From the NCBI GenBank assembly GCA_001600695.1, contig BCKQ01000005.1:797820-861819 (forward strand): a stretch of DNA of 64,000 nt, in the 5' to 3' direction. Numbering within the stretch: the stretch's first letter is position 1; each line of letters begins with the position of its first letter. The notes beneath the pieces were generated by a model. It made no database searches. It was not told where the DNA came from and saw nothing but the letters and a program-made list of their open reading frames with translations. This DNA is from Ascoidea asiatica JCM 7603. Taxonomy: Eukaryota; Fungi; Ascomycota. Shown here one piece after another: positions 49,301-59,844 of this stretch. Both the position numbers and the translations under genes were made by a program.

Positions 49301-49918
49301 GCAAATGAGCATTATATATTTGAGGATATGCAAGTAATGTCTGACTTTGAATTAAATGGATTATGTGAGAAATTTCCTTCAACACTTAATAGATTTAAAC
49401 TAAAAAAACAAGATTTTTTTAATTCTAGTAAAGTTGAAAAATTAGTTGAATTATTATCTTATCATATTAAGAATGGATCAAAAATTGTTGTATTTTCATT
49501 ATTCACTCAAGTTCTTGATATAATTGAAAAAGTTCTAGAATATGAAGCATTAAAATTTCTAAGATTAGATGGATCAACATCAGTTGAGATTAGACAAGAT
49601 TTAATTGATAAATTTTATAAAGAGGATGATATTAAAATTTTCTTACTATCAACAAAAAGTGGAGGATTTGGTATAAATTTAGTTTGTGCAAATATTGTTA
49701 TAATTTTCGACCAAAGTTTTAATCCTCATGATGATAGACAAGCAGAAGATAGATGCCATAGATTAGGTCAAAAAAAGGATGTAGAAGTTATTAGATTAAT
49801 TACTAAAAAGACTATAGAAGAAAATATTATGTTATTAGGAGATAAAAAAATTGAATTAGATCATGAATTAGAGGATCCAAATTTCGCCCAGACATTTTTA
49901 AAAGACCTTTCTATATAA
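46352..49918 (+). CDS. FUN30: Snf2-family chromatin remodeller Fun30/SMARCAD1
   Basis: VQVPDSSP N-terminal motif, CUE-like segment, ILADEMGLGKT, VVPSSTLENWLREF, YDEGHMLKN, LLTGTPLQNNLKEL, SFNPHDDRQAEDRCHRLGQ. Confidence 0.95.
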   Translation: MSSPFFSNKRSRSEVSDEEFNNDLDSLKNKRPFVQVPDSSPAPKALESSPMKPEDLIPPSLNTKTSLYQRFAHNGSPSANRSTSKISNISLGSPLSSKSANSNPYKKVLLQQNDKFNKKILKPNNISTFTNGSPAINGNGGRSIKSNSDMTILKNKFPLVKERIIFSLLNKHNGNLRETSAALSKFVQNNPKLLKSDPKLMITNSNLKASSLSFNKANLHLNDENSKGSSDLPRKVSPVIDLEKFKYKSNSNIKKPTMTITQKYSLMSAPKKKRKKLVRGSKNVEDEEPNSDDIAFINDDAEEQISDKKLAPSSFYSKSKKLSNSKKKRVVVNLSDEEFEKPFEKDETPSEIDDDVDEEDQYVNTETKQSKYETRILEFLNTAALLDVTDISNCSPEIAQLLIDSRPYKSLYEIENKDFGKLSSKDSSILNSKKRGGKRKAMGLKIVEKTEETLNGYDAIDTLIEKCSALGDKISASISTWGVDVNGEVINKTAFQNSLITLDKPNSEMDGLSVMKEVIAVDENATEVDGDDTSKITKETAEEDKSLEIIKQTSDIDDSLQVIKEEIKINNGETVENSINVENEVNTTIQEEPINNDDISDDENDDDYSDDESDDLNKQKVVKIAKANKEKLNGYISEKPQLLAENLELKIYQQFGFNWMNLLYNSDLSCILADEMGLGKTVQVITLLTYLKQIDPDNSGPNLIVVPSSTLENWLREFQKFSPELVVSPYYGTQAERLQLRYELSQVDFDILITTYNLATGSKDDHKFLAKQGFNCIVYDEGHMLKNSSSERYTKLMRLRGDFRILLTGTPLQNNLKELVSLLSFILPDVFKEHKNDLQALFNQKVTTKSEGKRGESEEIESSDDSKSDKDYNPLLSEKAISRAKKIMQPFVLRRKKDQVLKNLPKKVRKIEYCDILPSQKEIYEGEIADAQLQKSLAKGKAKNLIMQLRKAAIHPLLFRTIYTDKKLRSMAKAIMKEPVYVSANEHYIFEDMQVMSDFELNGLCEKFPSTLNRFKLKKQDFFNSSKVEKLVELLSYHIKNGSKIVVFSLFTQVLDIIEKVLEYEALKFLRLDGSTSVEIRQDLIDKFYKEDDIKIFLLSTKSGGFGINLVCANIVIIFDQSFNPHDDRQAEDRCHRLGQKKDVEVIRLITKKTIEENIMLLGDKKIELDHELEDPNFAQTFLKDLSI

Positions 49919-52900
49919 ATTAGTGTAATATATGCATAATGTATAATATTTTTAAAATTAAATGCAGAAATTTTCATTAGCCACATTCGATTTTGAGAAT
50001 TATGTAAGTTTTAAAGAGAATTTGAGTAAATCTATTAACTAAGACGAATTGATTACTCATAAGGGGATTTGTCAAACCATATCCCTCTGCCATAAAATGC
50101 AATATTATTATCAGACTAGCAAATTTAGTGAGTAATTTGCCTGATATTCTTTGTTTAGTCTCAATATTCAGAGAAATTTCATTCGAGAATAGTATTTACA
50201 AACTGGAAAAAAAATAATAGTGATTAATTTATTCAAATCCTGCCGTAGCACATTTTTAGTGATATAATGTTACGAGTAGCTACAGATTAAATTCTTTTCG
50301 ATTATTGGAATTATAAATTATATAAGGGAATAGGAGAGAATGAGATTGTGATAGATAATTTTTTAATACAAAATCAAATGTGTTCTTAATTGTTGAAAAA
50401 AGACAAAGCTAATATTATAGCAATGGTATAAACTGCACTCAATACTACAAACAATTATCAGCAAACATCGTGAAATACTTTACTTCCGTGTATTTTTTGA
50501 TTATGCTATAACTGTGAAAAGTGAGTAGAATTTTGAAGGTCAGTGTCCGAGCTCTTTTGAAGTCCAAGTATATTTTTTTATGAGCAAACCAAGGGTTGAA
50601 AAATAAGTAAAGACTTTTTTGCCTCCACTGAGTGAAAGAAAGCCTGTATACAAATGAGTGAATATTCTTGAGTACATAAGCAGCCTTGTGAATATTCAAC
50701 AGTGCTAAAGAAGTAAGGGAGCGTGCAATGAAGTGCAGAAACATCAAATTTAAATTTTTGATTTACTGACAGCCTAAGTCATCATGTAACACTTGCCATG
50801 CACAACTACTTAGTTACAAATATAGAGTTTAGCCTGGGACCTGGAGTATGGATTTTGTACTGTGTACAGTATACAGTAATGTGGTATATTCTTGGTCATT
50901 CGATTCCACTGAAATAATAATGCTCTTAATAATTTTTCATTATGCTTTGTATAATAATCCTACTCACAGTAAATTTTCGTTCTGTCTATATGTAGTTAAG
51001 CTTGTGTATAGAATATACTGTTGAAATATGATAGAGTATTTTAGAATCCCTATAGTAAATTAAGCAATCAAAGTAGTTCAATACACCATTTTTTTGTTTG
51101 TGTTATCAACTTACGCGCTTACTTCAGTTCAAAACAAAATGTTGAATTTTATGGTCTTATTTTTTACTGTGGCTGATGAAATGCTTTTGTGTTGAAAATT
51201 GTATCTAAATTATTTCAATTAACTAATAGCTAATTACAACTCACAATAGGTTTTTTTAAACCTTCCAAATACGAGTGGTAAAATTTGGGCAAATTTAGAA
51301 ATTTGAATTTTTTAGGTACATTAAGGAGTATACGCTTGAGTAAAAATCGAAATGTGTAAGTAAATAAACATTTCAAGGTATGTCATAGCCTAGTATTTCT
51401 TATGTTTTTTTAAACTCCAAAAGGTTCCAGACTCTTTTTTTGCCGATTGTTGATATATGAAAAAAATTAAGTTAAAGTGGATTATGTAATATTTTAAGGG
51501 TGGAAGTTGTTTTTCAAATAGTTTACGAGCTTTACTAGATAATTTAATAAAGGTAAATATTTCGTCAACAAGAAATTTCCAATTTTTAGAATATTGAATG
51601 ATAATTTGATTTCAAAAATTGAGAATTGAAAATGAAGAAGTATAAGGAGTAATACATTATATAGAAAATATTTAAAAGTTTATATTAATATTAAATTATT
51701 ATTCTTTCAAATTTTAGTGAATCATTGAAGTTCTTTTTCGAAATATTTTTTCCGAAATGGAAGGTTTTGAAATAAGGTACCCCCTCTTTAAAGAATATCT
51801 GTTAGTTCATAAAAAGAAATTGGAACTTAAGCTGTAAGTATTATGATTTCATTTTATGGTACAGAATATTGTTGTTTTGATTGTATAAAATTACTACAGT
51901 AAAATATTCCTACAAATTTTTATTTCACTTTTTGACCTCAAGTTATTATCATTTATCAAATATTTCAAAAGTTGTTTTAACTCAATAAAAAAGTTTCGGA
52001 AATCCTCGGAAAAAACTACTAAAAAAAAGAAAGCTGGATTTTGTTTTTTGTTCTTATCTTCTATTTCACGATTCTTTTAATTAAAAAACAGTTTCAAATA
52101 CTTCAAATACACTTTTGAAATTGTTTGAAAATTGCACATGGTAAATTCCAAATTTTTAAAAAATTAATTATAATTAAAAATAAAGAATATTCAAAAATTA
52201 AATTAAAATAATTTAAAAAAGAGATATTCCGATGTAGAACTGTAGAAAATGATTCAACGAAAGCTCAATTAAATAATTATAACTACTACTAGTAGGAATA
52301 GCATTCTTTCCTAGACCAGAATATTTTTTATATGTCCCACGTCACATCATCATCTCGGTAAAGCAGGAAGAAAAGATTTTGAAATAATGTAAAACGAGTT
52401 GTCACGTAATTGGGATTAGTGTAAAGTAGCTGAATTTAGCTTTATTTGGAGCCAGAAACGTAGTTTGTCTGGCACCTCGGTATTCGATATCAGGTTTGAA
52501 GGTAAATACAAAAATCCAATCTGCGAAAAAAAAAAACACCTTGCGTCTTTGGAGGATCATTAGTTTATAGGTGAAGTAGTCAGATGACTGAAGAGTGTTT
52601 ATGAACATTTAGTACTGTGATAATGTATGACGATATCTATTGCTGTGGTGATATCACAGGTGGTCTTTAGCAGTCTAGTGGCAGTGTAGTAGAGATGGCC
52701 TTGCGTCTGGAAACAGGAGTACTATCTTGTCAAATTATCTTTTCCGCATCATCTTTTATAACCATCCATTTGTAATATTGTAACATCATTTCATGCCGTA
52801 CCATATCGTAATAAAATAATCTAAATCAGCCTTCAGTTTACTAGCTTAATGTTCTTGTTTCATTTGCTCAGTTTCCAAATAAAAAAGTGCTGCAGAAATA

Positions 52901-54062
52901 AAAAAACTATCTTTTTAGAACTATCTTCTAATAAACTATCTTTTTAACGAGCATAATAACAGGTATCAAGAGGCTAATAAATAACGCCCAGTGTTTATAA
53001 ATTACCTAGCTAAGATTACCAATGTATCATACTTCAAATCACAATTCATGTTTAACAAATTTCAAATCAAAGAAAATTAACTCGTAAAAGTATTGATTTT
53101 TCAAAAAGGTGGAGAAATAATTATATTTTCAGCTCGGAAGAAAATTTATAGGTATGAAATTATGTATAAACAGTATTTCAAATATCCTCTATTCTATCTT
53201 TTTTACTATCTCTCTTGGAACAAAACATTTCAACTCAATTGAGGTTGTTTAAACTTCAGTTGAACTTTATGAAAACTTATGATTTTCCTTTTTGAATTCT
53301 TGTATCCTATAAAAATTTTGTACTCGTATTATGATATACTGTACACTGTAAATTTTATTCTGTAATTAATTGAATAATACATTCTATAATATGTTATGTA
53401 ATTTATTGTGTAAATAATTGTGTAATATAACATTATCAATCAATATATAATTTGTATACAAGCTTCCGCGGCACACAATTTTCTGTGTCTTGTCGAATAA
53501 AGTCTGGAACGCGGACAGCTCTGGTTCTAATTGAAAAGAGCTACAGAATGTAGACTTACGTTCAGTTCGGAGTAAACTCAAAATAAGTTGGATATGAAGT
53601 GAGCAGAGTTGAGTACATTAAACTCAAGAGTATGCCAGTAAAACACAAGTGCATAATGTATGTAGGCGAAGTGCGCGGAGTGCTTTCTAATTAAGGAGCG
53701 TAAGTTGACACAGACACAAGACTAGGTCTGGGCACTGTGCTCAGAAGTTTGCTGGGAGTTGGTCCTGCAAACCTTCACTCAAACCATATATTTAGGTTGA
53801 ATTGAAAGAATCAATTCACATAGAATAAGAAAGAAGAAAGAATTTTATCTCTTTTGATACGGTGAACTTTAGTCACACAAAGAAGTTAAAGAACTTTTCG
53901 ACAATTATATAACAAAATAATAAATAGTGTAACATCATTTCTTTACTTTTTTTACTTCAACCTTATTTAAGTCTATGCTCTACACTTTTTATCCAAATGA
54001 AAATGATTTAGTTTATTTCCCCAATTTTTCTCAATTTTATTCTAATCAACTTTTCATAAGGT

Positions 54063-54100
54063 TTCAACTGAATTGTAATTTAAATTACAATTCAGTTGAA
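54063..54100. repeat. Perfect 38-bp spacerless palindrome
   Basis: TTCAACTGAATTGTAATTT|AAATTACAATTCAGTTGAA is its own reverse complement. Confidence 0.95.
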
Positions 54101-54754
54101 TCAAAAGAATTCGAGTTTTATTATAATTTTATTGTAATTTTATTGTAAATTTATTGTAACATTGAAAAGCTCCATTTTGAAAAGTATATAAACAATTGAT
54201 ACTCTCTTATTTTATTCTTTTATTTTTCAGAATTATTTATTTATTTCCTTTCCAAATTTTAATTTTCCTATACTTATTTACTTATTTAATCTTTTTCTTT
54301 ATTAGCTAACTTAATTATCTTATCTACTACTTCAAATATTTAGTTGTAATAATACAAATTTTATAATTATTATTAGTTCTATTTTCTTTTGGGTTTTTGT
54401 CTCATATCAACTCTATTTCTAGTTACTATAAGACAATTAATTAGCCTCTAACCAGAATATTATACTGTTAATTATACTCCTACTATACTACTCCTACTCT
54501 TATTTTTACCTTTGTAATTTTATAACGTCGATCACTTTAACTTCTTGTTCTAGTATTTAGCTATACAATTTTACTTACTTTTCTCTCACACTCACTCTCT
54601 CATTCTATAACTCTTATTCTCCATTTTAATAATCCCTTATTTAATTTTAAATATCAATCAATTATTAATAGCTGAATATAACTTTTCATTGATAACTTAA
54701 TAACTACTATCATTTTTTATTTTCAAAAACTAATTTGTTAGAGAATATTATAAC

Positions 54755-54814
54755 TAAATATAAATATAAATATAAATATAAATATAAATATAAATATAAA
54801 TATAAATATAAATA
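54755..54814 (+). repeat. (TAAATA)10 tandem array upstream of the Ada-domain gene
   Basis: Direct read; forms overlapping TATAAATA boxes. Confidence 0.9.
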
Positions 54815-54951
54815 TATATAAAATTATAATTGCAATTATAACTATAATTCAATATCATTTATCATTGAAATACAATTACTTCAACTAATTATTATAATCT
54901 CTTGTTACTTCTATCAAAACATCTTTCTTTGAATCAATTAAAATCAATAAA

Positions 54952-57642
54952 ATGTCTTTAGGCGCCGAAGTATTTGGTGCTATTTTTAACCCTGCTAAGA
55001 ATTTTGATAGTTCTGAATCTGCTCCTTTTACTTCAAAAGAATATCCTACTGAAGAATCAAGATGGAGAGCTTTTTTATTTAGTGATCCATTAGCGGTTGG
55101 TGAATTTTTTGTTGGTAATAGAAATAAAAAAATTGTTTGTCGTCCAGATTGTGATGTTTATCAACCAATTAAAACAACAGATAGTTTTGAAGAATTTCCT
55201 AATTTAGATGAAGCTTTAAGAGCAGATTATTCTTCTTGTATTTCTTGTAAACCATGGGACTCGAATGCAATGAAAGTTCAAAGAAAATTAGCTCAACTTT
55301 GTGTGGATTATGTAAATCCACAAATCAATTTTTCTTTTGATTCTCCTCAAGATAAATCAAATTCTAATACTAGTAGTAATTCAAAAAAAAATTCAAATAA
55401 TTTAAATCTCAAATATAGTAGATTTTATAAAAAAGGTAAAGATAATTTAACTATTCAAAATAATAGATATATTCAAGATACCAAAGATATTCTGAGTATT
55501 GAAGATACTAAAGATATCAAAACCTTGAAAGGTGGTAAAGGTAAAGGTAAAGCTAAAGCAAAAAATAAAGGTGCTAAAGATACTAAAGAATCAAAAGAAT
55601 TCAAAGATGCTAGAGATGCTAAAGATGCTGAAGATGCTGAAGATGCTGAAGATGAAAAAGATATAAAAGACATTAAAAATGAAAAAGATGCCAAAGTTAT
55701 ACCATCTGAACTTATACTTATAGCACCTATCACTAATCGTAGACTGGTTGAATTAGCTTGTCTTCATATTGCTTCCGCTTCAGTTGCTTCAATGCAAAAG
55801 AAAAAATATGTTCGTTCTTCTTCTAGTTCCCCTTTATCCTTTTTAGGCTCGAATATTTTTAGTTTAAACTCGAATATTTTAACTTCCAGAGAAAAAATCG
55901 TTGTTAGTAATATTGCTGACGAAAATGAACATGGCAAAAAAATTCAATCAAAAAAACCAAAAAATGAAAGAAAAAAAAGAAGAGGTGGTATATTAGGTTT
56001 TAAAGATTTGGCAACAAAAGCAAAATTATCTGCTTGGCATTTTCATAGAGTCTTTAAAAATGTCTCAGGTATAACTCCAAAACTTTATGGTGATAGATGC
56101 TTAGCTTTTCTGAAAGATTATCCTGATGGTCAGTATGATAAAAATCAAGTAAAAAAATCCTCCTTACCCAATACTTCTACTTCTGTCAGTGACTTTAGCA
56201 ACAGCTCAAATGTTTCTTCTGAATATTCTTCAAGTACAAATTTAAATAATAATTCTGAAGAGATTCAAAATAATAATCATACTCAAAAAACTGAAAATTT
56301 TATTAAATCTAAAGCTTTGAAATCAATATCCCCAAAAAATAAAAAATCATCAGCTAAACCTTCACCTAAAAAAAACATCCATAATAATGATAATAATAAT
56401 AATAATGATACAACAAAGAACAGCATCAACAAAATTACAAAGCCATCATCCAATAAAAGACATTCTTCAAATACAAATAGAAAACACTCAACCACTAGAC
56501 AAAATAGTATCAAAAGCAATAATTCTAACAATTCTCAAAAGTTTCAAACTTTCAATAATTTCAATAATGATCAAAATAATAATCAAAATAGTTCATATAC
56601 TCAAAATTCACAAGAAAGTATTTCAATAAACAACAACTTCCAATATACTGTTCCCAACAATGACACATCTAATTTATCTTCTTCAATGCTTGCCCAAGAA
56701 GATAGTGTTTTTACTTCAACTGATACTAAAACTTACACTAATACAAATACTAATGGCTCAAATAGTCCTGCAAATGGGTTTGGGCCAGCTTTTTTTCATC
56801 AACAACAATTTTCTCATGGCAGATCCGTTTCAAATCCTGAATATAGTAGTAATATGCTAACTGATTTTTCTCTTGATTTTGATGATAATGATATAAATAG
56901 TATTACTCAATTTCCAACTGGTCAGGTGAACATTGGTCTTGCTAATAATGGCTTTAATGAGTTCGAGGTTCCAGTAGCAGCAGTAAGAGCAGATAGTTTA
57001 GATAATAACATGAATCTGTACTTACACCATACTAACACTCAAAATAACTTTGTACTTTCACCTTCAAATAATGAAATATATACTAATGAATTTTCAATGC
57101 CTATGCTTAGCTTCGAAGATATGAATGGTTCCAATGTAGCAAACATTCAACCAAATCAACAAGTTCAAAATAGCATTCAAAATCAAGATCAACTTCAAAA
57201 TCAATTCCAAAATCAAAATCAATTCCAAAATCAAAATCAATTCCAAAATCAAAATCAGTTTCAAGGCCAAGAACAAGACCTAAACCAATTTCAAAATCAA
57301 GATCAAAATTTAAGTCAATACCAAAATCAGAACCAATATCAAAATCAATTCCAAAATCAAGATCAAAATTTAAGTCACAGCCAAAATCAAAATTTTACTA
57401 CAAATCAAGATTTTTTCACAAATCCAAATTTTGCGAACCAAGATACTATTCCAAAACAAAGTCAAAGCCCAATCTTTCACCAAAATTCTTTTCAAAATCA
57501 AAAGCAGGAACCAGATATTATGAATGATGCCAATATTACCAATCAAAATCCTTATGAGCCTAGAAATTCTCAATCAACCTCAAAAAATGTTACAAGTACT
57601 TTCGAGTCAATTACTATTAATTCTTTATTAAGCCCCATGTAA
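54952..57642 (+). CDS. Ada Zn-binding domain plus AraC-type HTH transcription factor-like protein (AdaA/Mpt-like) with N/Q-rich tail
   Basis: EESRWRAFLFSDP-AVGEFFVG-----IVCRPDC...F-NLDEAL-A-YSSCISCKP (Cys63/67/96/99) matches the N-Ada pattern. GFKDLATKAKLSAWHFHRVFKNVSGITPKLYG matches the Ada/AraC HTH. Confidence 0.88.
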   Translation: MSLGAEVFGAIFNPAKNFDSSESAPFTSKEYPTEESRWRAFLFSDPLAVGEFFVGNRNKKIVCRPDCDVYQPIKTTDSFEEFPNLDEALRADYSSCISCKPWDSNAMKVQRKLAQLCVDYVNPQINFSFDSPQDKSNSNTSSNSKKNSNNLNLKYSRFYKKGKDNLTIQNNRYIQDTKDILSIEDTKDIKTLKGGKGKGKAKAKNKGAKDTKESKEFKDARDAKDAEDAEDAEDEKDIKDIKNEKDAKVIPSELILIAPITNRRLVELACLHIASASVASMQKKKYVRSSSSSPLSFLGSNIFSLNSNILTSREKIVVSNIADENEHGKKIQSKKPKNERKKRRGGILGFKDLATKAKLSAWHFHRVFKNVSGITPKLYGDRCLAFLKDYPDGQYDKNQVKKSSLPNTSTSVSDFSNSSNVSSEYSSSTNLNNNSEEIQNNNHTQKTENFIKSKALKSISPKNKKSSAKPSPKKNIHNNDNNNNNDTTKNSINKITKPSSNKRHSSNTNRKHSTTRQNSIKSNNSNNSQKFQTFNNFNNDQNNNQNSSYTQNSQESISINNNFQYTVPNNDTSNLSSSMLAQEDSVFTSTDTKTYTNTNTNGSNSPANGFGPAFFHQQQFSHGRSVSNPEYSSNMLTDFSLDFDDNDINSITQFPTGQVNIGLANNGFNEFEVPVAAVRADSLDNNMNLYLHHTNTQNNFVLSPSNNEIYTNEFSMPMLSFEDMNGSNVANIQPNQQVQNSIQNQDQLQNQFQNQNQFQNQNQFQNQNQFQGQEQDLNQFQNQDQNLSQYQNQNQYQNQFQNQDQNLSHSQNQNFTTNQDFFTNPNFANQDTIPKQSQSPIFHQNSFQNQKQEPDIMNDANITNQNPYEPRNSQSTSKNVTSTFESITINSLLSPM

Positions 57643-58221
57643 TTTTTTTATAGATGTATGATAAATTATCTGTTATATTAATTTTTTAAAATCTTCCTTT
57701 TATTTCTCGTTATTTTTTTCAATTTTTTTTCTCAATTTTTCTATTCTTTACTTTTTACTTTTTGACTATAGTTCACTAGTTAAAATGTTTTCACCTTTTA
57801 GGTTAATCTATAATGTATAATATTTAATTTCTTTTAATATCAATTTACTTTTACCAAAAACATATTTACACTTCCAATATACAACTGAATAATCTTGATT
57901 GCTCAATTTGGTGAGCCGCTCGCTATATACTGCCAGAAACACTAAATACCACCTCAAAATCTTTTTTTTTACATAGTAAACGTCGTTTCTAAAACAGGAA
58001 CAATAACCTCAAAATAATCAAATACTTTTTTTAAACACTTTTAAACCCTTTTAAAAACGGGACTACATATTTATGTCATATGATTCAGCTTATTACTATG
58101 GTCCCGGACCACGCATTTTTGGGGTTTAGTGGGCCCCTCAATTTGGGAACAAGTTACGAGCTGCTTGCTCACTTTTGGGAATGATACAGAAATAAATCTT
58201 GATCAAAAACAATTGCAAATG

Positions 58222-58249
58222 CACGTGAAAAATTTAGTTTTACCACGTG
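58222..58249. promoter_or_regulatory. RRPE flanked by two CACGTG E-boxes in the DBP8 promoter
   Basis: CACGTG 58222-58227, TGAAAAATTT 58226-58235, CACGTG 58244-58249. Confidence 0.65.
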
Positions 58250-58476
58250 TAATATTAGAGTCCAATTGTATGGATTTTGTTAGGTTTGATCTGACGGCGA
58301 TAAAAATTATAAAAATTATTTAACTGAAATATTTTGGAACGTAATTTATTTTTTTTTAAGCGAAAATACAATATAATTCAAAATTATTTAATTGTCTTTA
58401 ATTCAATTCGGGAAAAGTTTTTCAAAAAACTTTGTAAAAGTTGAAACTAGAAAACCACTTTCACTAAACTTAAATT

Positions 58477-59844
58477 ATGTCAACTGAATTTAAAAAATTG
58501 GGTCTTTCAAAATGGCTTTGTGAAGCCTTACAATCTTTGAAAATTTCAACTCCAAGTTCTATTCAAAAGGCATGCATACCCAAAATCCTAGCAGGTAGTG
58601 ATTGTATTGGTGGTGCAAAAACTGGTTCTGGTAAAACAATTGCATTTGCAGCCCCGATGTTAACTCGATGGTCTGAAGATCCAAGTGCAATATTTGGGGT
58701 TATTTTAACTCCCACGAGAGAATTAGCTATTCAAATTGCCGAGCAATTTCTTGCTTTGGGTTCTTCAATGAATATTAGAGTCTCTGTTATAATTGGAGGA
58801 GAAGATATGATACGACAGGCCATAGATATACAAAATAAACCTCATTTCATTGTTGCGACTCCTGGAAGATTGGCTGATCATATTATGAATAGTGGTGATG
58901 ATACACTTGAGGGCTTAAGTAGGGTCAAATATTTAGTTCTTGATGAAGCAGATAGACTATTAACGGATAGTTTTGGAAATGATTTGGAAAAATGCATTGT
59001 TGCTTTACCATCTTCTGAGAAAAGGCAGACTCTTTTATTCACTGCAACACTTACCAATGCTATTAAAGAATTAGAAAATCAAAAAAGAAAATCAAACAAA
59101 GAGATATTCATTTATGAAGTAGAAACTCTTGATAAAATTGTTATTCCTGCTACATTAACCACATATTACATTTTAATTCCTCCCGATGCTTTAAAAGAAG
59201 CTTATTTATTTAGTCTATTGACTCATGAAAATTATACTGATAAGTCTGCCATAATTTTTGTGAATAGAACTGTTACTGCGGAAGTATTGAGAAGAACACT
59301 TCGTATTTTAGATGTACGAGTAACATCTTTGCATTCGGAAATGCCCCAATCAGAGAGAATAAACTCCTTGTACAGATTTAAAGCTGGTGCTGCACGAATA
59401 TTAATTGCTACTGATGTTGCTTCAAGAGGTCTTGATATTCCTATAGTAGAATTAGTTGTTAATTATGATATTCCTGCAGACCCTGATGACTTTATTCATC
59501 GAGTAGGAAGAACTGCAAGAGCTGGTAGAAAAGGAGATAGTATCAGTATGATAACACCTAATGATATTCAAAGATTATTGGCAATTGAGCAAAGAATAAA
59601 TAAGAAAATGAATAAGACTGACCTTATTGATGACGATTATGTAATAAAATCAAGTTTAAGCAAAACAACAAGAGCAAAAAGAGAATGTCTTGTAGATATG
59701 GAGTCAGAAAATTTTGGTGAAAAAAGAAGAATTAATAAGTACAAGAATGAAAAATCCAAGCAGAAAAAAATACCAAAAAGCACTCATTCACGTTTGTTTA
59801 AAAGAAAAGTTAAAGATAAAAAAGTAAAGAAAACCAAAGACTAG
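58477..59844 (+). CDS. DBP8: DEAD-box RNA helicase, 40S biogenesis
   Basis: [74 protein letters not shown]. Confidence 0.96.
   Translation: [455 protein letters not shown]

What the first reader, a model, noticed from the sequence alone, without database searches (positions are those of the whole stretch)
54952..57642. Bacterial-type Ada alkylation-sensor module rebuilt as a eukaryotic-style transcription factor
Seen: all four Zn ligands of the N-Ada domain are intact (C63-RPD-C67, C96-IS-C99). An AraC-type HTH (LSAWHFHRVFK...GITPKLY) sits near residues 348-380, followed by about 500 aa of N/S/Q-rich tail with an acidic-hydrophobic patch (LTDFSLDFDDND) and QNQFQNQ repeats. No PCHR alkyltransferase or AlkA glycosylase domain is fused. 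Established: E. coli Ada accepts a methyl group on Cys38 and becomes an activator; Aspergillus has an adaptive response using such a protein; S. cerevisiae lacks one. Inference: this yeast has an uncharacterised Cys-alkylation- or thiol-switched regulator with a eukaryotic activation domain. If the host is methylotrophic, formaldehyde or methylating stress is a plausible input.
Basis: partly seen in the sequence, partly recalled or inferred. Interest (0 to 1): 0.8.

Follow-up and report, generated by a model that had tools for sequence, protein, structure and literature searches.

The report
Yeast Ada-derived transcription factor, divergent member
This yeast gene really does encode a bacterial-type Ada zinc module joined to one DNA-binding helix-turn-helix and a long activator-like tail, but it belongs to an unstudied family found across many budding yeasts, and its zinc module has lost the features needed for the classical DNA-alkylation response.

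Summary
Window 54952-57642 (+) is an 896-aa ORF with a genuine Ada_Zn_binding domain (Pfam 51.7 bits; 1.1 A fit to E. coli N-Ada), all four Zn cysteines, one AraC-type HTH and a 500-aa N/S/Q-rich tail.

It is not a one-off. It is the longest and fastest-evolving member of a monophyletic budding-yeast family of about 65 clusters at 50% identity. Named members come from Candida albicans, [C.] subhashii, [C.] boidinii, [C.] arabinofermentans, Wickerhamomyces and Saccharomycopsis, and all are labelled 'hypothetical'. O'Hanlon et al. 2012 had already counted Candida proteins as MPT (N-Ada) orthologues.

The alkylation-sensor reading is only partly supported:
- The arginines flanking the Zn site are lost (PCKRC reads SCISC here; domain charge -2 versus a canonical mean of +5.8).
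- The genome's only AGT-family gene is an alkyltransferase-like protein (PWWRV), and no AlkB is found.
- No alcohol-oxidase-type gene is found, so the methylotrophy idea has no support.

Best reading: a transcription factor whose Ada module no longer repairs DNA and is either a DNA-independent thiol switch or purely structural. The scan had noted this same stretch once before (s1-621635), not on other DNA. Novelty: new variant of a known kind; interest is moderate.

The parts
54952..57642 (+). Whole CDS, 896 aa plus stop: yeast-type Ada-HTH transcription-factor candidate
   Evidence: the only Ada_Zn_binding locus in the 20.3-Mb genome
55042..55260 (+). Ada-type Zn(Cys)4 domain, residues 31-103. 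Ligand codons: C63 55138-55140, C67 55150-55152, C96 55237-55239, C99 55246-55248
   Evidence: Pfam 51.7 bits; phmmer to 1WPK/1ZGW/1U8B; AF2 pLDDT above 90; VIA-align Z 13.6, rmsd 1.1 A over 73 residues to 1U8B_A; the four Cys are invariant in 47 family rows
55261..55332 (+). Yeast-type-specific conserved helix, residues 104-127 (N122 and F127 invariant, I125 nearly so); no counterpart in canonical Ada
   Evidence: AF2 helix 104-124 with pLDDT 85-93; conservation; left unaligned by hhalign against canonical proteins
55342..55731 (+). Insert 1, residues 131-260: disordered and K/D-rich, expanded by a 9/27-bp tandem array at 55566-55696
   Evidence: pLDDT below 55; composition K 21%, D 12%; TRF
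55735..55818 (+). Helix 1 of the AraC-type subdomain, residues 262-289 (A269-C270-L271-H272; the family has ACRH)
   Evidence: AF2 helix 262-289 with pLDDT above 90 over most of it; aligned to the canonical helix by hhalign; C270 and H272 invariant
55954..55989 (+). Poly-basic arm, residues 335-346 (K-P-K-N-E-R-K-K-R-R-G-G); yeast-type specific; inferred nuclear-localisation signal and/or DNA-contacting arm
   Evidence: R344 and G346 invariant, G345 nearly invariant; absent from canonical proteins; function is inference
55996..56118 (+). Single AraC-type helix-turn-helix, residues 349-389, with recognition helix W-H-F-H-R-V-F-K and the yeast-specific invariant C383
   Evidence: Pfam HTH_AraC 20.1 bits, HTH_18 positions 1-30 of 80; 1WPK residues 103-132 aligned; 29 of 30 family members hit HTH_AraC; hhalign; AF2 pLDDT 88-96
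56137..57639 (+). Low-complexity N/S/Q-rich tail, residues 396-896, net charge -10: candidate activation region
   Evidence: composition; not conserved in sequence across the family
56851..56892 (+). Acidic-hydrophobic patch, residues 634-647
   Evidence: such patches occur in 44 of 63 family tails against 25.1 +/- 3.8 in shuffled tails (max 36 of 200 shuffles)
57177..57393 (+). 12/18/30-bp tandem array encoding the QNQFQN repeats
   Evidence: TRF
49919..54951 (.). 5.0-kb upstream interval with no ORF above 100 aa and no Rfam match: presumed extended regulatory region
   Evidence: Orthologue loci have 5.2 kb (C. albicans), 4.7 kb (S. crataegensis), at least 3.5 kb and 1.7 kb

Best explanation
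The gene encodes a nuclear, sequence-specific transcription factor of a budding-yeast-specific branch of the fungal MPT/N-Ada family.

Shown: an intact Ada-fold Zn(Cys)4 domain; a split but conserved AraC-type first HTH subdomain; two disordered inserts; a long Q/N-rich tail with an acidic-hydrophobic patch; membership of a monophyletic yeast family.

Inferred:
- DNA is bound by helix 262-289, the K/R-R-G-G arm and the HTH at 349-389.
- The tail recruits the transcription machinery.
- The Zn domain no longer docks on the DNA backbone to take methyl groups from phosphotriesters, because the arginine clamp around the ligands has been replaced by acidic or neutral residues, and because the classical partners (AGT, AlkB) are missing from this genome.
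- The retained, invariant Zn-thiolate centre most likely acts in cis as a DNA-independent covalent switch. Direct alkylation or oxidation of a thiolate would change the charge or fold of the domain and so modulate the neighbouring basic DNA-binding module.

My odds: it is a transcription factor of this family, about 0.85; it is not coupled to DNA methylphosphotriester repair, about 0.65; the Zn site is a direct thiol switch rather than purely structural, about 0.4. The confidence given is for the whole statement.
For: - Domain identity and fold.
- Family-level homology of the Zn domain, helix 1 and the HTH to canonical Ada/MPT: hhalign 99.9%, E 6.9e-32.
- Family: 65 of the 142 best relatives that could be classified share C-x-P-x-C followed by an acidic residue (Asp in 60, Glu in 3) plus W-H-F-H-R-V-F. 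They form one side of a branch with SH-aLRT 100.
- The four Cys, P65, C270, H272, most of the HTH and C383 are invariant in 47 rows. The window protein keeps 51 of 57 positions that are at least 90% conserved.
- Loss of the DNA clamp: canonical proteins have Arg at Cys2+3 (66 of 77), Cys3-2 (71 of 77) and Cys3+2 (71 of 77), with mean domain charge +5.8. The yeast type has Asp at Cys2+1 (60 of 65) and mean charge -0.8; the window protein is -2, with D68, Y70, S94, I97 and S98 at the positions of Ada R43, R45, R67, K70 and R71.
- PMC10779285 gives CRPSC and PCKRC as the defining MPT motifs and describes the electrostatic switch.
- Partners absent: the sole PF01035 locus is an ATL (PWWRV; best PDB match S. 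pombe Atl1, 3GVA, E 8.7e-22) even when searched at E <= 10. No AlkB-type PF13532 match.
- Activator-like tail: acidic-hydrophobic patches are enriched across family tails.
- Long gene-free upstream regions in 4 of 5 loci fit a heavily regulated regulator gene.
- Precedent for fungal Ada-like proteins acting as regulators: A. fumigatus MPT (PMC3439912) and S. hirsutum SaraC (PMC9769804).
Against: - No experiment and no RNA data exist for this organism, so expression, DNA binding, activation and any Cys modification are all untested.
- The HTH assignment for this single protein is below Pfam's threshold, and the structural match of the HTH module is only Z of about 5.
- Invariant cysteines are equally expected for a purely structural zinc site.
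- In many family members a basic residue survives at Cys2+3 (R in 20, H in 12, K in 3 of 65), so some backbone contact cannot be excluded for the family.
- Absence of AGT and AlkB comes from a six-frame first-look search of a 71-contig assembly, which is not proof of absence.
- No shared promoter word was found that would point to targets or autoregulation.
- The window protein has the longest terminal branch in the family (1.24 against a median of 0.26), so it may have diverged in function from its relatives.
Confidence: 0.4

Rival explanations
1. Classical Ada/AfMPT mechanism. The Zn domain removes methyl groups from DNA methylphosphotriesters onto Cys63, and the methylated protein then activates alkylation-repair genes, giving an adaptive response.
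For: The homologous Cys38-equivalent and the first motif (CRPDC against CRPSC) are retained. The domain superposes on methylated N-Ada at 1.1 A. The A. fumigatus MPT orthologue is required for MNNG adaptation, and Candida species were predicted to have the same response (PMC3439912).
Against: The second defining motif PCKRC reads SCISC, and the flanking Arg residues that are near-invariant in canonical proteins are gone; domain charge is -2 against +5.8. The genome has no AGT (only an ATL) and no AlkB, so it fails the MPT-plus-AGT criterion of PMC3439912. The Pfam score is half that of canonical proteins: 51.7 against about 105 bits.
Confidence: 0.15
2. The Ada fold is now only a structural zinc module, or a protein-protein or auxiliary DNA-binding module, of an ordinary transcription factor. 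Control is exerted on the gene's own transcription through its long upstream region and on the protein by conventional means, not by covalent modification of the Zn site.
For: All conserved features (four Cys, Pro65, fold) are what a structural Zn site needs. The chemistry-related flanking residues changed at the base of the family and then stayed fixed. Upstream gene-free regions are 3.5-5.2 kb in 4 of 5 loci. SaraC shows an Ada-like fungal protein acting as a broad regulator when overexpressed.
Against: It does not explain why the exposed Cys38-equivalent context (C-x-P-x-C) and the whole Ada fold are kept so precisely over a family this old (1.1 A rmsd). It also does not explain the fixed Asp directly after Cys2 (60 of 65), which looks like tuning of the site.
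Confidence: 0.35
3. A decaying or functionally drifting gene: a fast-evolving, repeat-inflated relic with no selected function in this lineage.
For: It has the longest terminal branch in the family (1.24 against a median of 0.26) and the lowest retention of constrained positions (89%), including R271L and F81E. In-frame tandem arrays inflate it to 896 aa, against 331-662 aa for the other yeast-type members.
Against: A 2.7-kb frame stays open in a genome of about 29% G+C. It keeps 51 of 57 constrained positions, including every Zn ligand and the recognition helix, close to other basal members at 90-91%. The folded modules are predicted with pLDDT above 90.
Confidence: 0.05

Closest known systems
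Aspergillus fumigatus MPT (AFUA_5G06350) and the canonical filamentous-fungal MPT type (e.g. Hypoxylon rubiginosum KAI6081180.1, P0132)
   Same: A eukaryotic stand-alone N-Ada homologue: Ada Zn(Cys)4 domain followed by only the first AraC-type HTH, with the same W-H-F-H-R-V-F recognition helix and no fused AGT. AfMPT is required for the MNNG adaptive response (PMC3439912).
   Different: The canonical type is short (about 200-300 aa), scores about 105 bits on Ada_Zn_binding, keeps C-K-[AS]-R and C-K-R-C with basic flanks, and has only 43-55 aa between the Zn domain and the recognition helix. The window protein scores 51.7 bits, has acidic or neutral flanks, a 262-aa gap with two disordered inserts, a yeast-specific helix, a K/R-R-G-G arm, an extra invariant Cys383 and a 500-aa tail. 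Its genome lacks the AGT partner.
Escherichia coli Ada N-terminal domain (N-Ada; PDB 1ADN, 1U8B, 1ZGW, 1WPK)
   Same: Same Zn-domain fold (Z 13.6, 1.1 A over 73 residues), same four ligands including the methyl-acceptor Cys38 equivalent, and a collinear first HTH.
   Different: E. coli Ada has a bipartite AraC domain (two HTHs) and a fused C-terminal AGT domain. Its residues R43, R45, R67, K70 and R71 correspond to D68, Y70, S94, I97 and S98 here. The electrostatic switch that lets methylated Ada bind DNA (PMC10779285) presupposes a basic surface that this protein lacks.
Uncharacterised yeast-type Ada-HTH proteins: C. albicans KGU28437.1 (547 aa), [C.] subhashii XP_049262935.1, S. crataegensis XP_064854387.1, W. 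pijperi KAH3687140.1, [C.] boidinii GME66720.1, [C.] arabinofermentans ODV84333.1
   Same: True family membership: same signature around the Zn site, the ACRH helix, the basic arm, a near-identical HTH, C383, disordered inserts and low-complexity tails. All are annotated only as hypothetical or 'Ada DNA repair metal-binding domain-containing'.
   Different: The window protein is the longest (896 aa against 331-662) and the most divergent. The best Zn-domain identity to any relative is 39%. It has R271L and F81E substitutions, tandem-repeat-expanded inserts and no conserved synteny.
SaraC of Stereum hirsutum (XP_007299133.1)
   Same: A fungal Ada_Zn_binding plus HTH_AraC protein reported to act as a broad transcriptional regulator rather than only in repair (PMC9769804).
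   Different: SaraC is a basidiomycete protein described as a hypothetical bifunctional regulator/O6-methylguanine methyltransferase, from a separate clade. Its sequence was not compared here.

Membership tests
N-Ada / MPT methyltransferase (Pfam PF02805 Ada_Zn_binding) | Match to the Ada_Zn_binding profile, and the Ada Zn-domain fold | tested here: met
   51.7 bits against a cut-off of 23, profile positions 1-64 of 65; Z 13.6, rmsd 1.1 A over 73 residues to 1U8B_A
N-Ada / MPT methyltransferase (Pfam PF02805 Ada_Zn_binding) | Four Zn-ligand cysteines, including the methyl-acceptor Cys38 equivalent | tested here: met
   C63, C67, C96 and C99 align to C38, C42, C69 and C72; invariant in 47 family rows
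N-Ada / MPT methyltransferase (Pfam PF02805 Ada_Zn_binding) | Consensus motifs CRPSC and PCKRC (PMC10779285) with flanking basic residues | tested here: not met
   The first motif is close (CRPDC) but is followed by Asp. The second reads SCISC. Arg at three near-invariant canonical positions (66-71 of 77) is absent. Domain charge is -2 against a mean of +5.8
N-Ada / MPT methyltransferase (Pfam PF02805 Ada_Zn_binding) | Irreversible methyl transfer from DNA methylphosphotriester to the Cys | not testable with these tools
   Needs a biochemical assay; the sequence features argue against it
Ada-type adaptive response (criterion of PMC3439912: MPT plus AGT in the genome) | An O6-alkylguanine alkyltransferase (PCHR motif) encoded in the same genome | tested here: not met
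   Only one PF01035 locus even at E <= 10. It is a 120-aa ATL with PWWRV, and its best PDB match is S. pombe Atl1 3GVA at E 8.7e-22. Caveat: six-frame first-look search of a 71-contig assembly
Ada-type adaptive response (criterion of PMC3439912: MPT plus AGT in the genome) | Regulon members AlkB or AlkA present | tested here: inconclusive
   No PF13532 (AlkB-type) match. One HhH-GPD locus was found but not resolved as MAG1/AlkA-like versus NTG/OGG
AraC/XylS transcription factors (PF12833 HTH_18 / PF00165 HTH_AraC) | Bipartite DNA-binding domain with two HTH subdomains | tested here: not met
   Only HTH_18 positions 1-30 of 80 are matched, and HTH_AraC scores 20.1 bits, below the 26.6 cut-off. 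Nothing is conserved after residue 389. The same holds for canonical fungal MPT-type proteins
AraC/XylS transcription factors (PF12833 HTH_18 / PF00165 HTH_AraC) | Homology of the single HTH to Ada's first HTH subdomain | tested here: met
   Collinear phmmer match to 1WPK residues 103-132. 29 of 30 family members hit HTH_AraC. hhalign of yeast-type against canonical alignments gives 99.9% and includes helix 1 and the HTH
Yeast-type Ada-HTH family (unnamed; defined here) | C-x-P-x-C-D signature, ACRH-type helix, R-R-G-G arm, W-H-F-H-R-V-F-K helix, T-P-K-x-Y-G-x-x-C, and placement inside the yeast clade | tested here: met
   51 of 57 constrained positions kept; inside the SH-aLRT 100 clade. One deviation: ACLH instead of ACRH
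Wor3 family of C. albicans (considered from memory) | The C. albicans family member is WOR3 (orf19.467) | tested here: not met
   Four published WOR3 oligos (PMC12333994 supplement) are absent from the 17.6-kb C. albicans locus at up to 2 mismatches. Whether Wor3 is a distant paralogue was not tested; Lohse et al. 2013 is not held

The most novel reading that the evidence does not exclude
Early in budding-yeast evolution the Ada methyl-acceptor Zn(Cys)4 module was uncoupled from DNA repair. It was converted into an acidic, DNA-independent sensor or autoinhibitory domain that gates a neighbouring basic single-HTH DNA-binding module. The result would be a lineage-specific class of electrophile- or redox-switched transcription factors present in C. 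albicans and many other yeasts. In the present lineage it persists with no AGT or AlkB at all, so it would control something other than alkylation repair. The long regulatory upstream regions hint at a developmental or stress programme.
Probability: 0.25. Interest if true: 0.65.

Novelty: new variant of a known kind. Interest (0 to 1): 0.45.

Why it matters
Ada is the textbook case of a protein that turns a covalent DNA-repair event into gene activation, and in eukaryotes only the Aspergillus MPT has been studied. This work shows that many budding yeasts, including the pathogen C. albicans and the industrial methanol-utilising yeast [C.] boidinii, carry a strongly remodelled, unstudied version. 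It keeps the zinc-thiolate centre and one recognition helix, but it has lost the DNA-backbone clamp and gained disordered inserts and activator-like tails. The published assumption that 'MPT orthologue present means adaptive response present' in Candida is therefore questionable. The family also offers a tractable case of how a bacterial one-component sensor is re-engineered into a eukaryotic transcription factor. For this window specifically the gene is one divergent member, so the value lies in the family-level insight rather than in this locus.

Tried and rejected
1. Word-index protein searches with the Ada region, in two length frames, found nothing. Relatives appeared only in the exhaustive phmmer search.
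2. Lead from memory that the C. albicans orthologue might be WOR3: rejected, because four published WOR3 oligos are absent from the locus. The original Wor3 paper is not held, and reviews give no domain class.
3. I could not determine the systematic or gene name of the C. albicans orthologue, or find any phenotype. Ten literature searches found no paper naming a yeast-type member. That is absence within the held library only.
4. Methylotrophy: no GMC oxidoreductase in the genome, so this was rejected as a rationale.
5. Shared promoter words among five orthologue promoters, and between this promoter and the genome's ATL promoter, were no more frequent than in shuffles. The TTGCAA-core palindrome and the ATTGTAA repeats are absent from the ATL promoter.
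6. Rfam scan of 49900-58500: no match.
7. Expression: no RNA run holds the locus, only DNA runs that may be the source assembly.
8. Structural match of the HTH module to AraC-type domains is only Z of about 5, which is not decisive, so I replaced it with the profile-profile test.
Full report
OBSERVATION. Window 54952-57642 (+) is an 896-aa ATG-initiated ORF. It lies in DNA of about 29% G+C, where an open frame of this length cannot be chance. Pfam finds Ada_Zn_binding at residues 36-101 (51.7 bits, cut-off 23, profile positions 1-64 of 65). It also finds HTH_AraC (20.1 bits, cut-off 26.6) and HTH_18 (positions 1-30 of 80) at 351-382, both below threshold. NCBIfam sees only the N-terminal part of the Ada equivalog. 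phmmer against PDB aligns E. coli N-Ada (1WPK, 1ZGW, 1U8B) collinearly: Zn domain 33-109 to Ada 8-82, and residues 351-380 to Ada 103-132. That alignment places C63, C67, C96 and C99 on Ada C38, C42, C69 and C72. The tail (396-896) is N 21%, S 14%, Q 13%, with an acidic-hydrophobic patch at 634-647. The Q-N-Q-F repeats and a K-D-A repeat in the first insert are DNA-level tandem arrays. No AGT, AlkA or other domain is fused.

ANATOMY. An AlphaFold2 model of residues 1-400, built with 46 family rows, is confident (pLDDT about 90 or more) for residues 31-130, 262-289 and 350-395. It is disordered in 131-260 and 290-349. The Zn domain superposes on the methylated N-Ada/DNA crystal structure 1U8B at Z 13.6 and 1.1 A over 73 residues. 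The helical module (262-289 plus 350-389) matches AraC-type domains only at Z of about 5. A profile-profile comparison of the yeast-type alignment with an alignment of canonical Ada/MPT proteins gives 99.9% probability (E 6.9e-32, 139 columns). It aligns three blocks in order: the Zn domain, helix 1 (residues 263-276) and the HTH (345-384). It leaves two inserts unaligned, including a conserved yeast-specific helix at 104-127. The protein is therefore an N-Ada homologue whose first AraC subdomain has been split by disordered inserts. The second insert ends in a K-K-R-R-G-G arm directly before the HTH.

RELATIVES. Word-index searches were blank. The exhaustive phmmer search of the Zn domain found 214 proteins at E <= 1e-3, the best only 39% identical. 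Of the 142 among the best 150 that could be classified, 65 share a distinctive signature. They have C-x-P-x-C followed by an acidic residue (Asp in 60, Glu in 3), and W-H-F-H-R-V-F lies 125-250 residues downstream. None has a PCHR motif, and lengths run from 331 to 662 aa. Named members are:
- C. albicans KGU28437.1
- [C.] subhashii
- Saccharomycopsis crataegensis
- Wickerhamomyces pijperi
- [C.] boidinii
- [C.] arabinofermentans

All are 'hypothetical' or carry the automatic name 'Ada DNA repair metal-binding domain-containing protein'. In 30 members Pfam finds Ada_Zn_binding (30 of 30), HTH_AraC (29 of 30) and nothing else recurrent. A tree of the two conserved modules puts the yeast type on one side of a branch with SH-aLRT 100. 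The window protein sits inside that clade near P0001 and S. crataegensis, with the longest terminal branch (1.24 against a median of 0.26). It still keeps 51 of 57 positions that are at least 90% conserved in the family, close to other basal members. The genome has a single copy. Synteny is not conserved.

WHAT IS ALREADY KNOWN. O'Hanlon et al. 2012 (PMC3439912) showed that A. fumigatus MPT, a stand-alone N-Ada orthologue, is needed for adaptation to MNNG. They reported MPT orthologues only in Ascomycetes, explicitly predicted the response in Candida, and proposed a bacterial origin by horizontal transfer. Canonical filamentous-fungal proteins such as the Hypoxylon one also have only the first HTH (HTH_18 positions 1-33 of 80). 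The single HTH is therefore ancestral in fungi. SaraC of Stereum hirsutum is an Ada-like protein reported as a global regulator of secondary metabolism (PMC9769804). I found no paper on any yeast-type member. A recollection that the C. albicans member might be WOR3 was tested with published WOR3 oligos and rejected.

WHY THE CLASSICAL MECHANISM IS DOUBTFUL HERE.
First, the review PMC10779285 gives CRPSC and PCKRC as the MPT motifs and describes the methylation-dependent electrostatic switch. Here the motifs read CRPDC-D and SCISC. Across the relatives, canonical domains have Arg at Cys2+3 (66 of 77), Cys3-2 (71 of 77) and Cys3+2 (71 of 77), and a mean net charge of +5.8. The yeast type has lost these, has Asp after Cys2 in 60 of 65, and averages -0.8. 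The window protein is -2. The substrate of MPT repair is the DNA backbone, so loss of the basic surface argues against that chemistry.

Second, the genome's only PF01035 locus, even at E <= 10, encodes a 120-aa protein with PWWRV in place of PCHRV. Its best solved relative is S. pombe Atl1 (3GVA, E 8.7e-22), so it is an alkyltransferase-like protein, not an AGT. No AlkB-type match was found. The organism thus fails the MPT-plus-AGT criterion of PMC3439912.

Third, no GMC oxidoreductase (the alcohol-oxidase family) is found. The family also occurs in species such as C. albicans, Saccharomycopsis and Wickerhamomyces as well as in [C.] boidinii and [C.] arabinofermentans; which of these grow on methanol is my own knowledge. 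The formaldehyde/methanol idea therefore has no support.

MOST LIKELY FUNCTION. The near-invariant HTH and basic arm, the disordered inserts and the Q/N-rich tails point to a nuclear sequence-specific activator. So does the enrichment of acidic-hydrophobic patches in the tails: 44 of 63, against 25.1 +/- 3.8 in shuffled tails. The 3.5-5.2 kb gene-free upstream regions in four of five loci suggest that the gene itself is under complex control. The invariant Zn ligands, the fixed Asp beside Cys2 and the precisely kept fold suggest that the zinc-thiolate centre is still used. I favour, at about 0.4, a DNA-independent covalent switch (direct alkylation or oxidation) acting in cis on the basic DNA-binding module. 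A purely structural role is nearly as likely (0.35). The classical repair-coupled mechanism is less likely (0.15), and decay is unlikely (0.05). DNA binding, activation, localisation and modification are all inferences. No RNA data exist for this organism, and no target motif could be inferred.

GENETIC CODE. Two of the four CTG codons fall in alignable positions. Residue 265 is Leu in 41 of 46 relatives, and residue 387 is I/L/F/V/M in all 46. This agrees with standard CUG = Leu decoding for this gene.

VERDICT. The locus is a divergent, repeat-expanded member of an unstudied budding-yeast variant of the known fungal MPT/N-Ada family. The new points from this analysis are the family-wide loss of the arginine clamp, the yeast-specific additions, and the absence of AGT and AlkB in this genome. 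Together these make a classical adaptive response unlikely. The same stretch had been noted once before by the scan (s1-621635), with a reading that my tests bear out.

Noticed in passing
G000:C5:448063-448425 (locus L002:1471-1833, + strand): The genome's only AGT-family (PF01035) gene is a 120-aa alkyltransferase-like (ATL) protein with PWWRV instead of PCHRV. Its closest solved relative is S. pombe Atl1. No MGT1-type suicide methyltransferase and no AlkB-type dioxygenase were detected in the 20.3-Mb assembly.
   Followed up: yes
window 54063-54100 and 54125-54160: A perfect 38-bp palindrome (two 19-nt arms, no spacer) about 850 bp upstream of the ATG, followed directly by three direct copies of an ATTTTATTGTAA-like unit. 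Its half-site words are absent from the ATL promoter. Function unknown.
   Followed up: partly
window 54755-54841: An (ATAAAT)n microsatellite of about 55 bp followed by the 18-bp palindrome TTATAATTGCAATTATAA (54824-54841), 110 bp before the ATG. In DNA this A+T-rich the significance is uncertain.
   Followed up: partly
window 49919-54951; L004 2791-8000 and 9645-17644; L005 3265-8000: Family genes sit behind unusually long gene-free intervals: 5.0 kb here, 5.2 kb upstream plus about 8 kb downstream in C. albicans, and 4.7 kb in S. crataegensis. No ORF above 100 aa and no Rfam match here. This suggests complex regulation or unannotated non-coding transcripts.
   Followed up: partly
window 55261-55332 (residues 104-127): A confidently predicted helix with invariant N122 and F127 that is conserved in all yeast-type members and has no counterpart in canonical Ada/MPT proteins. 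Role unknown; possibly packing against the split HTH module or an interaction surface.
   Followed up: partly
window 55566-55696 and 57177-57393: In-frame tandem arrays (9/27-bp K-D-A units; 12/18/30-bp Q-N-Q-F units) account for much of the excess length of this member: 896 aa against 331-662 aa in relatives. They are likely to be length-polymorphic.
   Followed up: partly
window 55744-55746 and 56110-56112 (CTG codons for residues 265 and 387): CTG codons fall at positions that are Leu or another hydrophobic residue in all aligned relatives, consistent with standard CUG = Leu decoding. This holds even though the closest named relative (Saccharomycopsis) belongs, to my knowledge, to a CUG-reassigned clade.
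   Followed up: partly
window 58477-59844: The downstream neighbour is a 455-aa DEAD-box helicase ORF, called DBP8 by another first-stage note. It starts 835 bp after the stop of the Ada-family gene, on the same strand.
   Followed up: no
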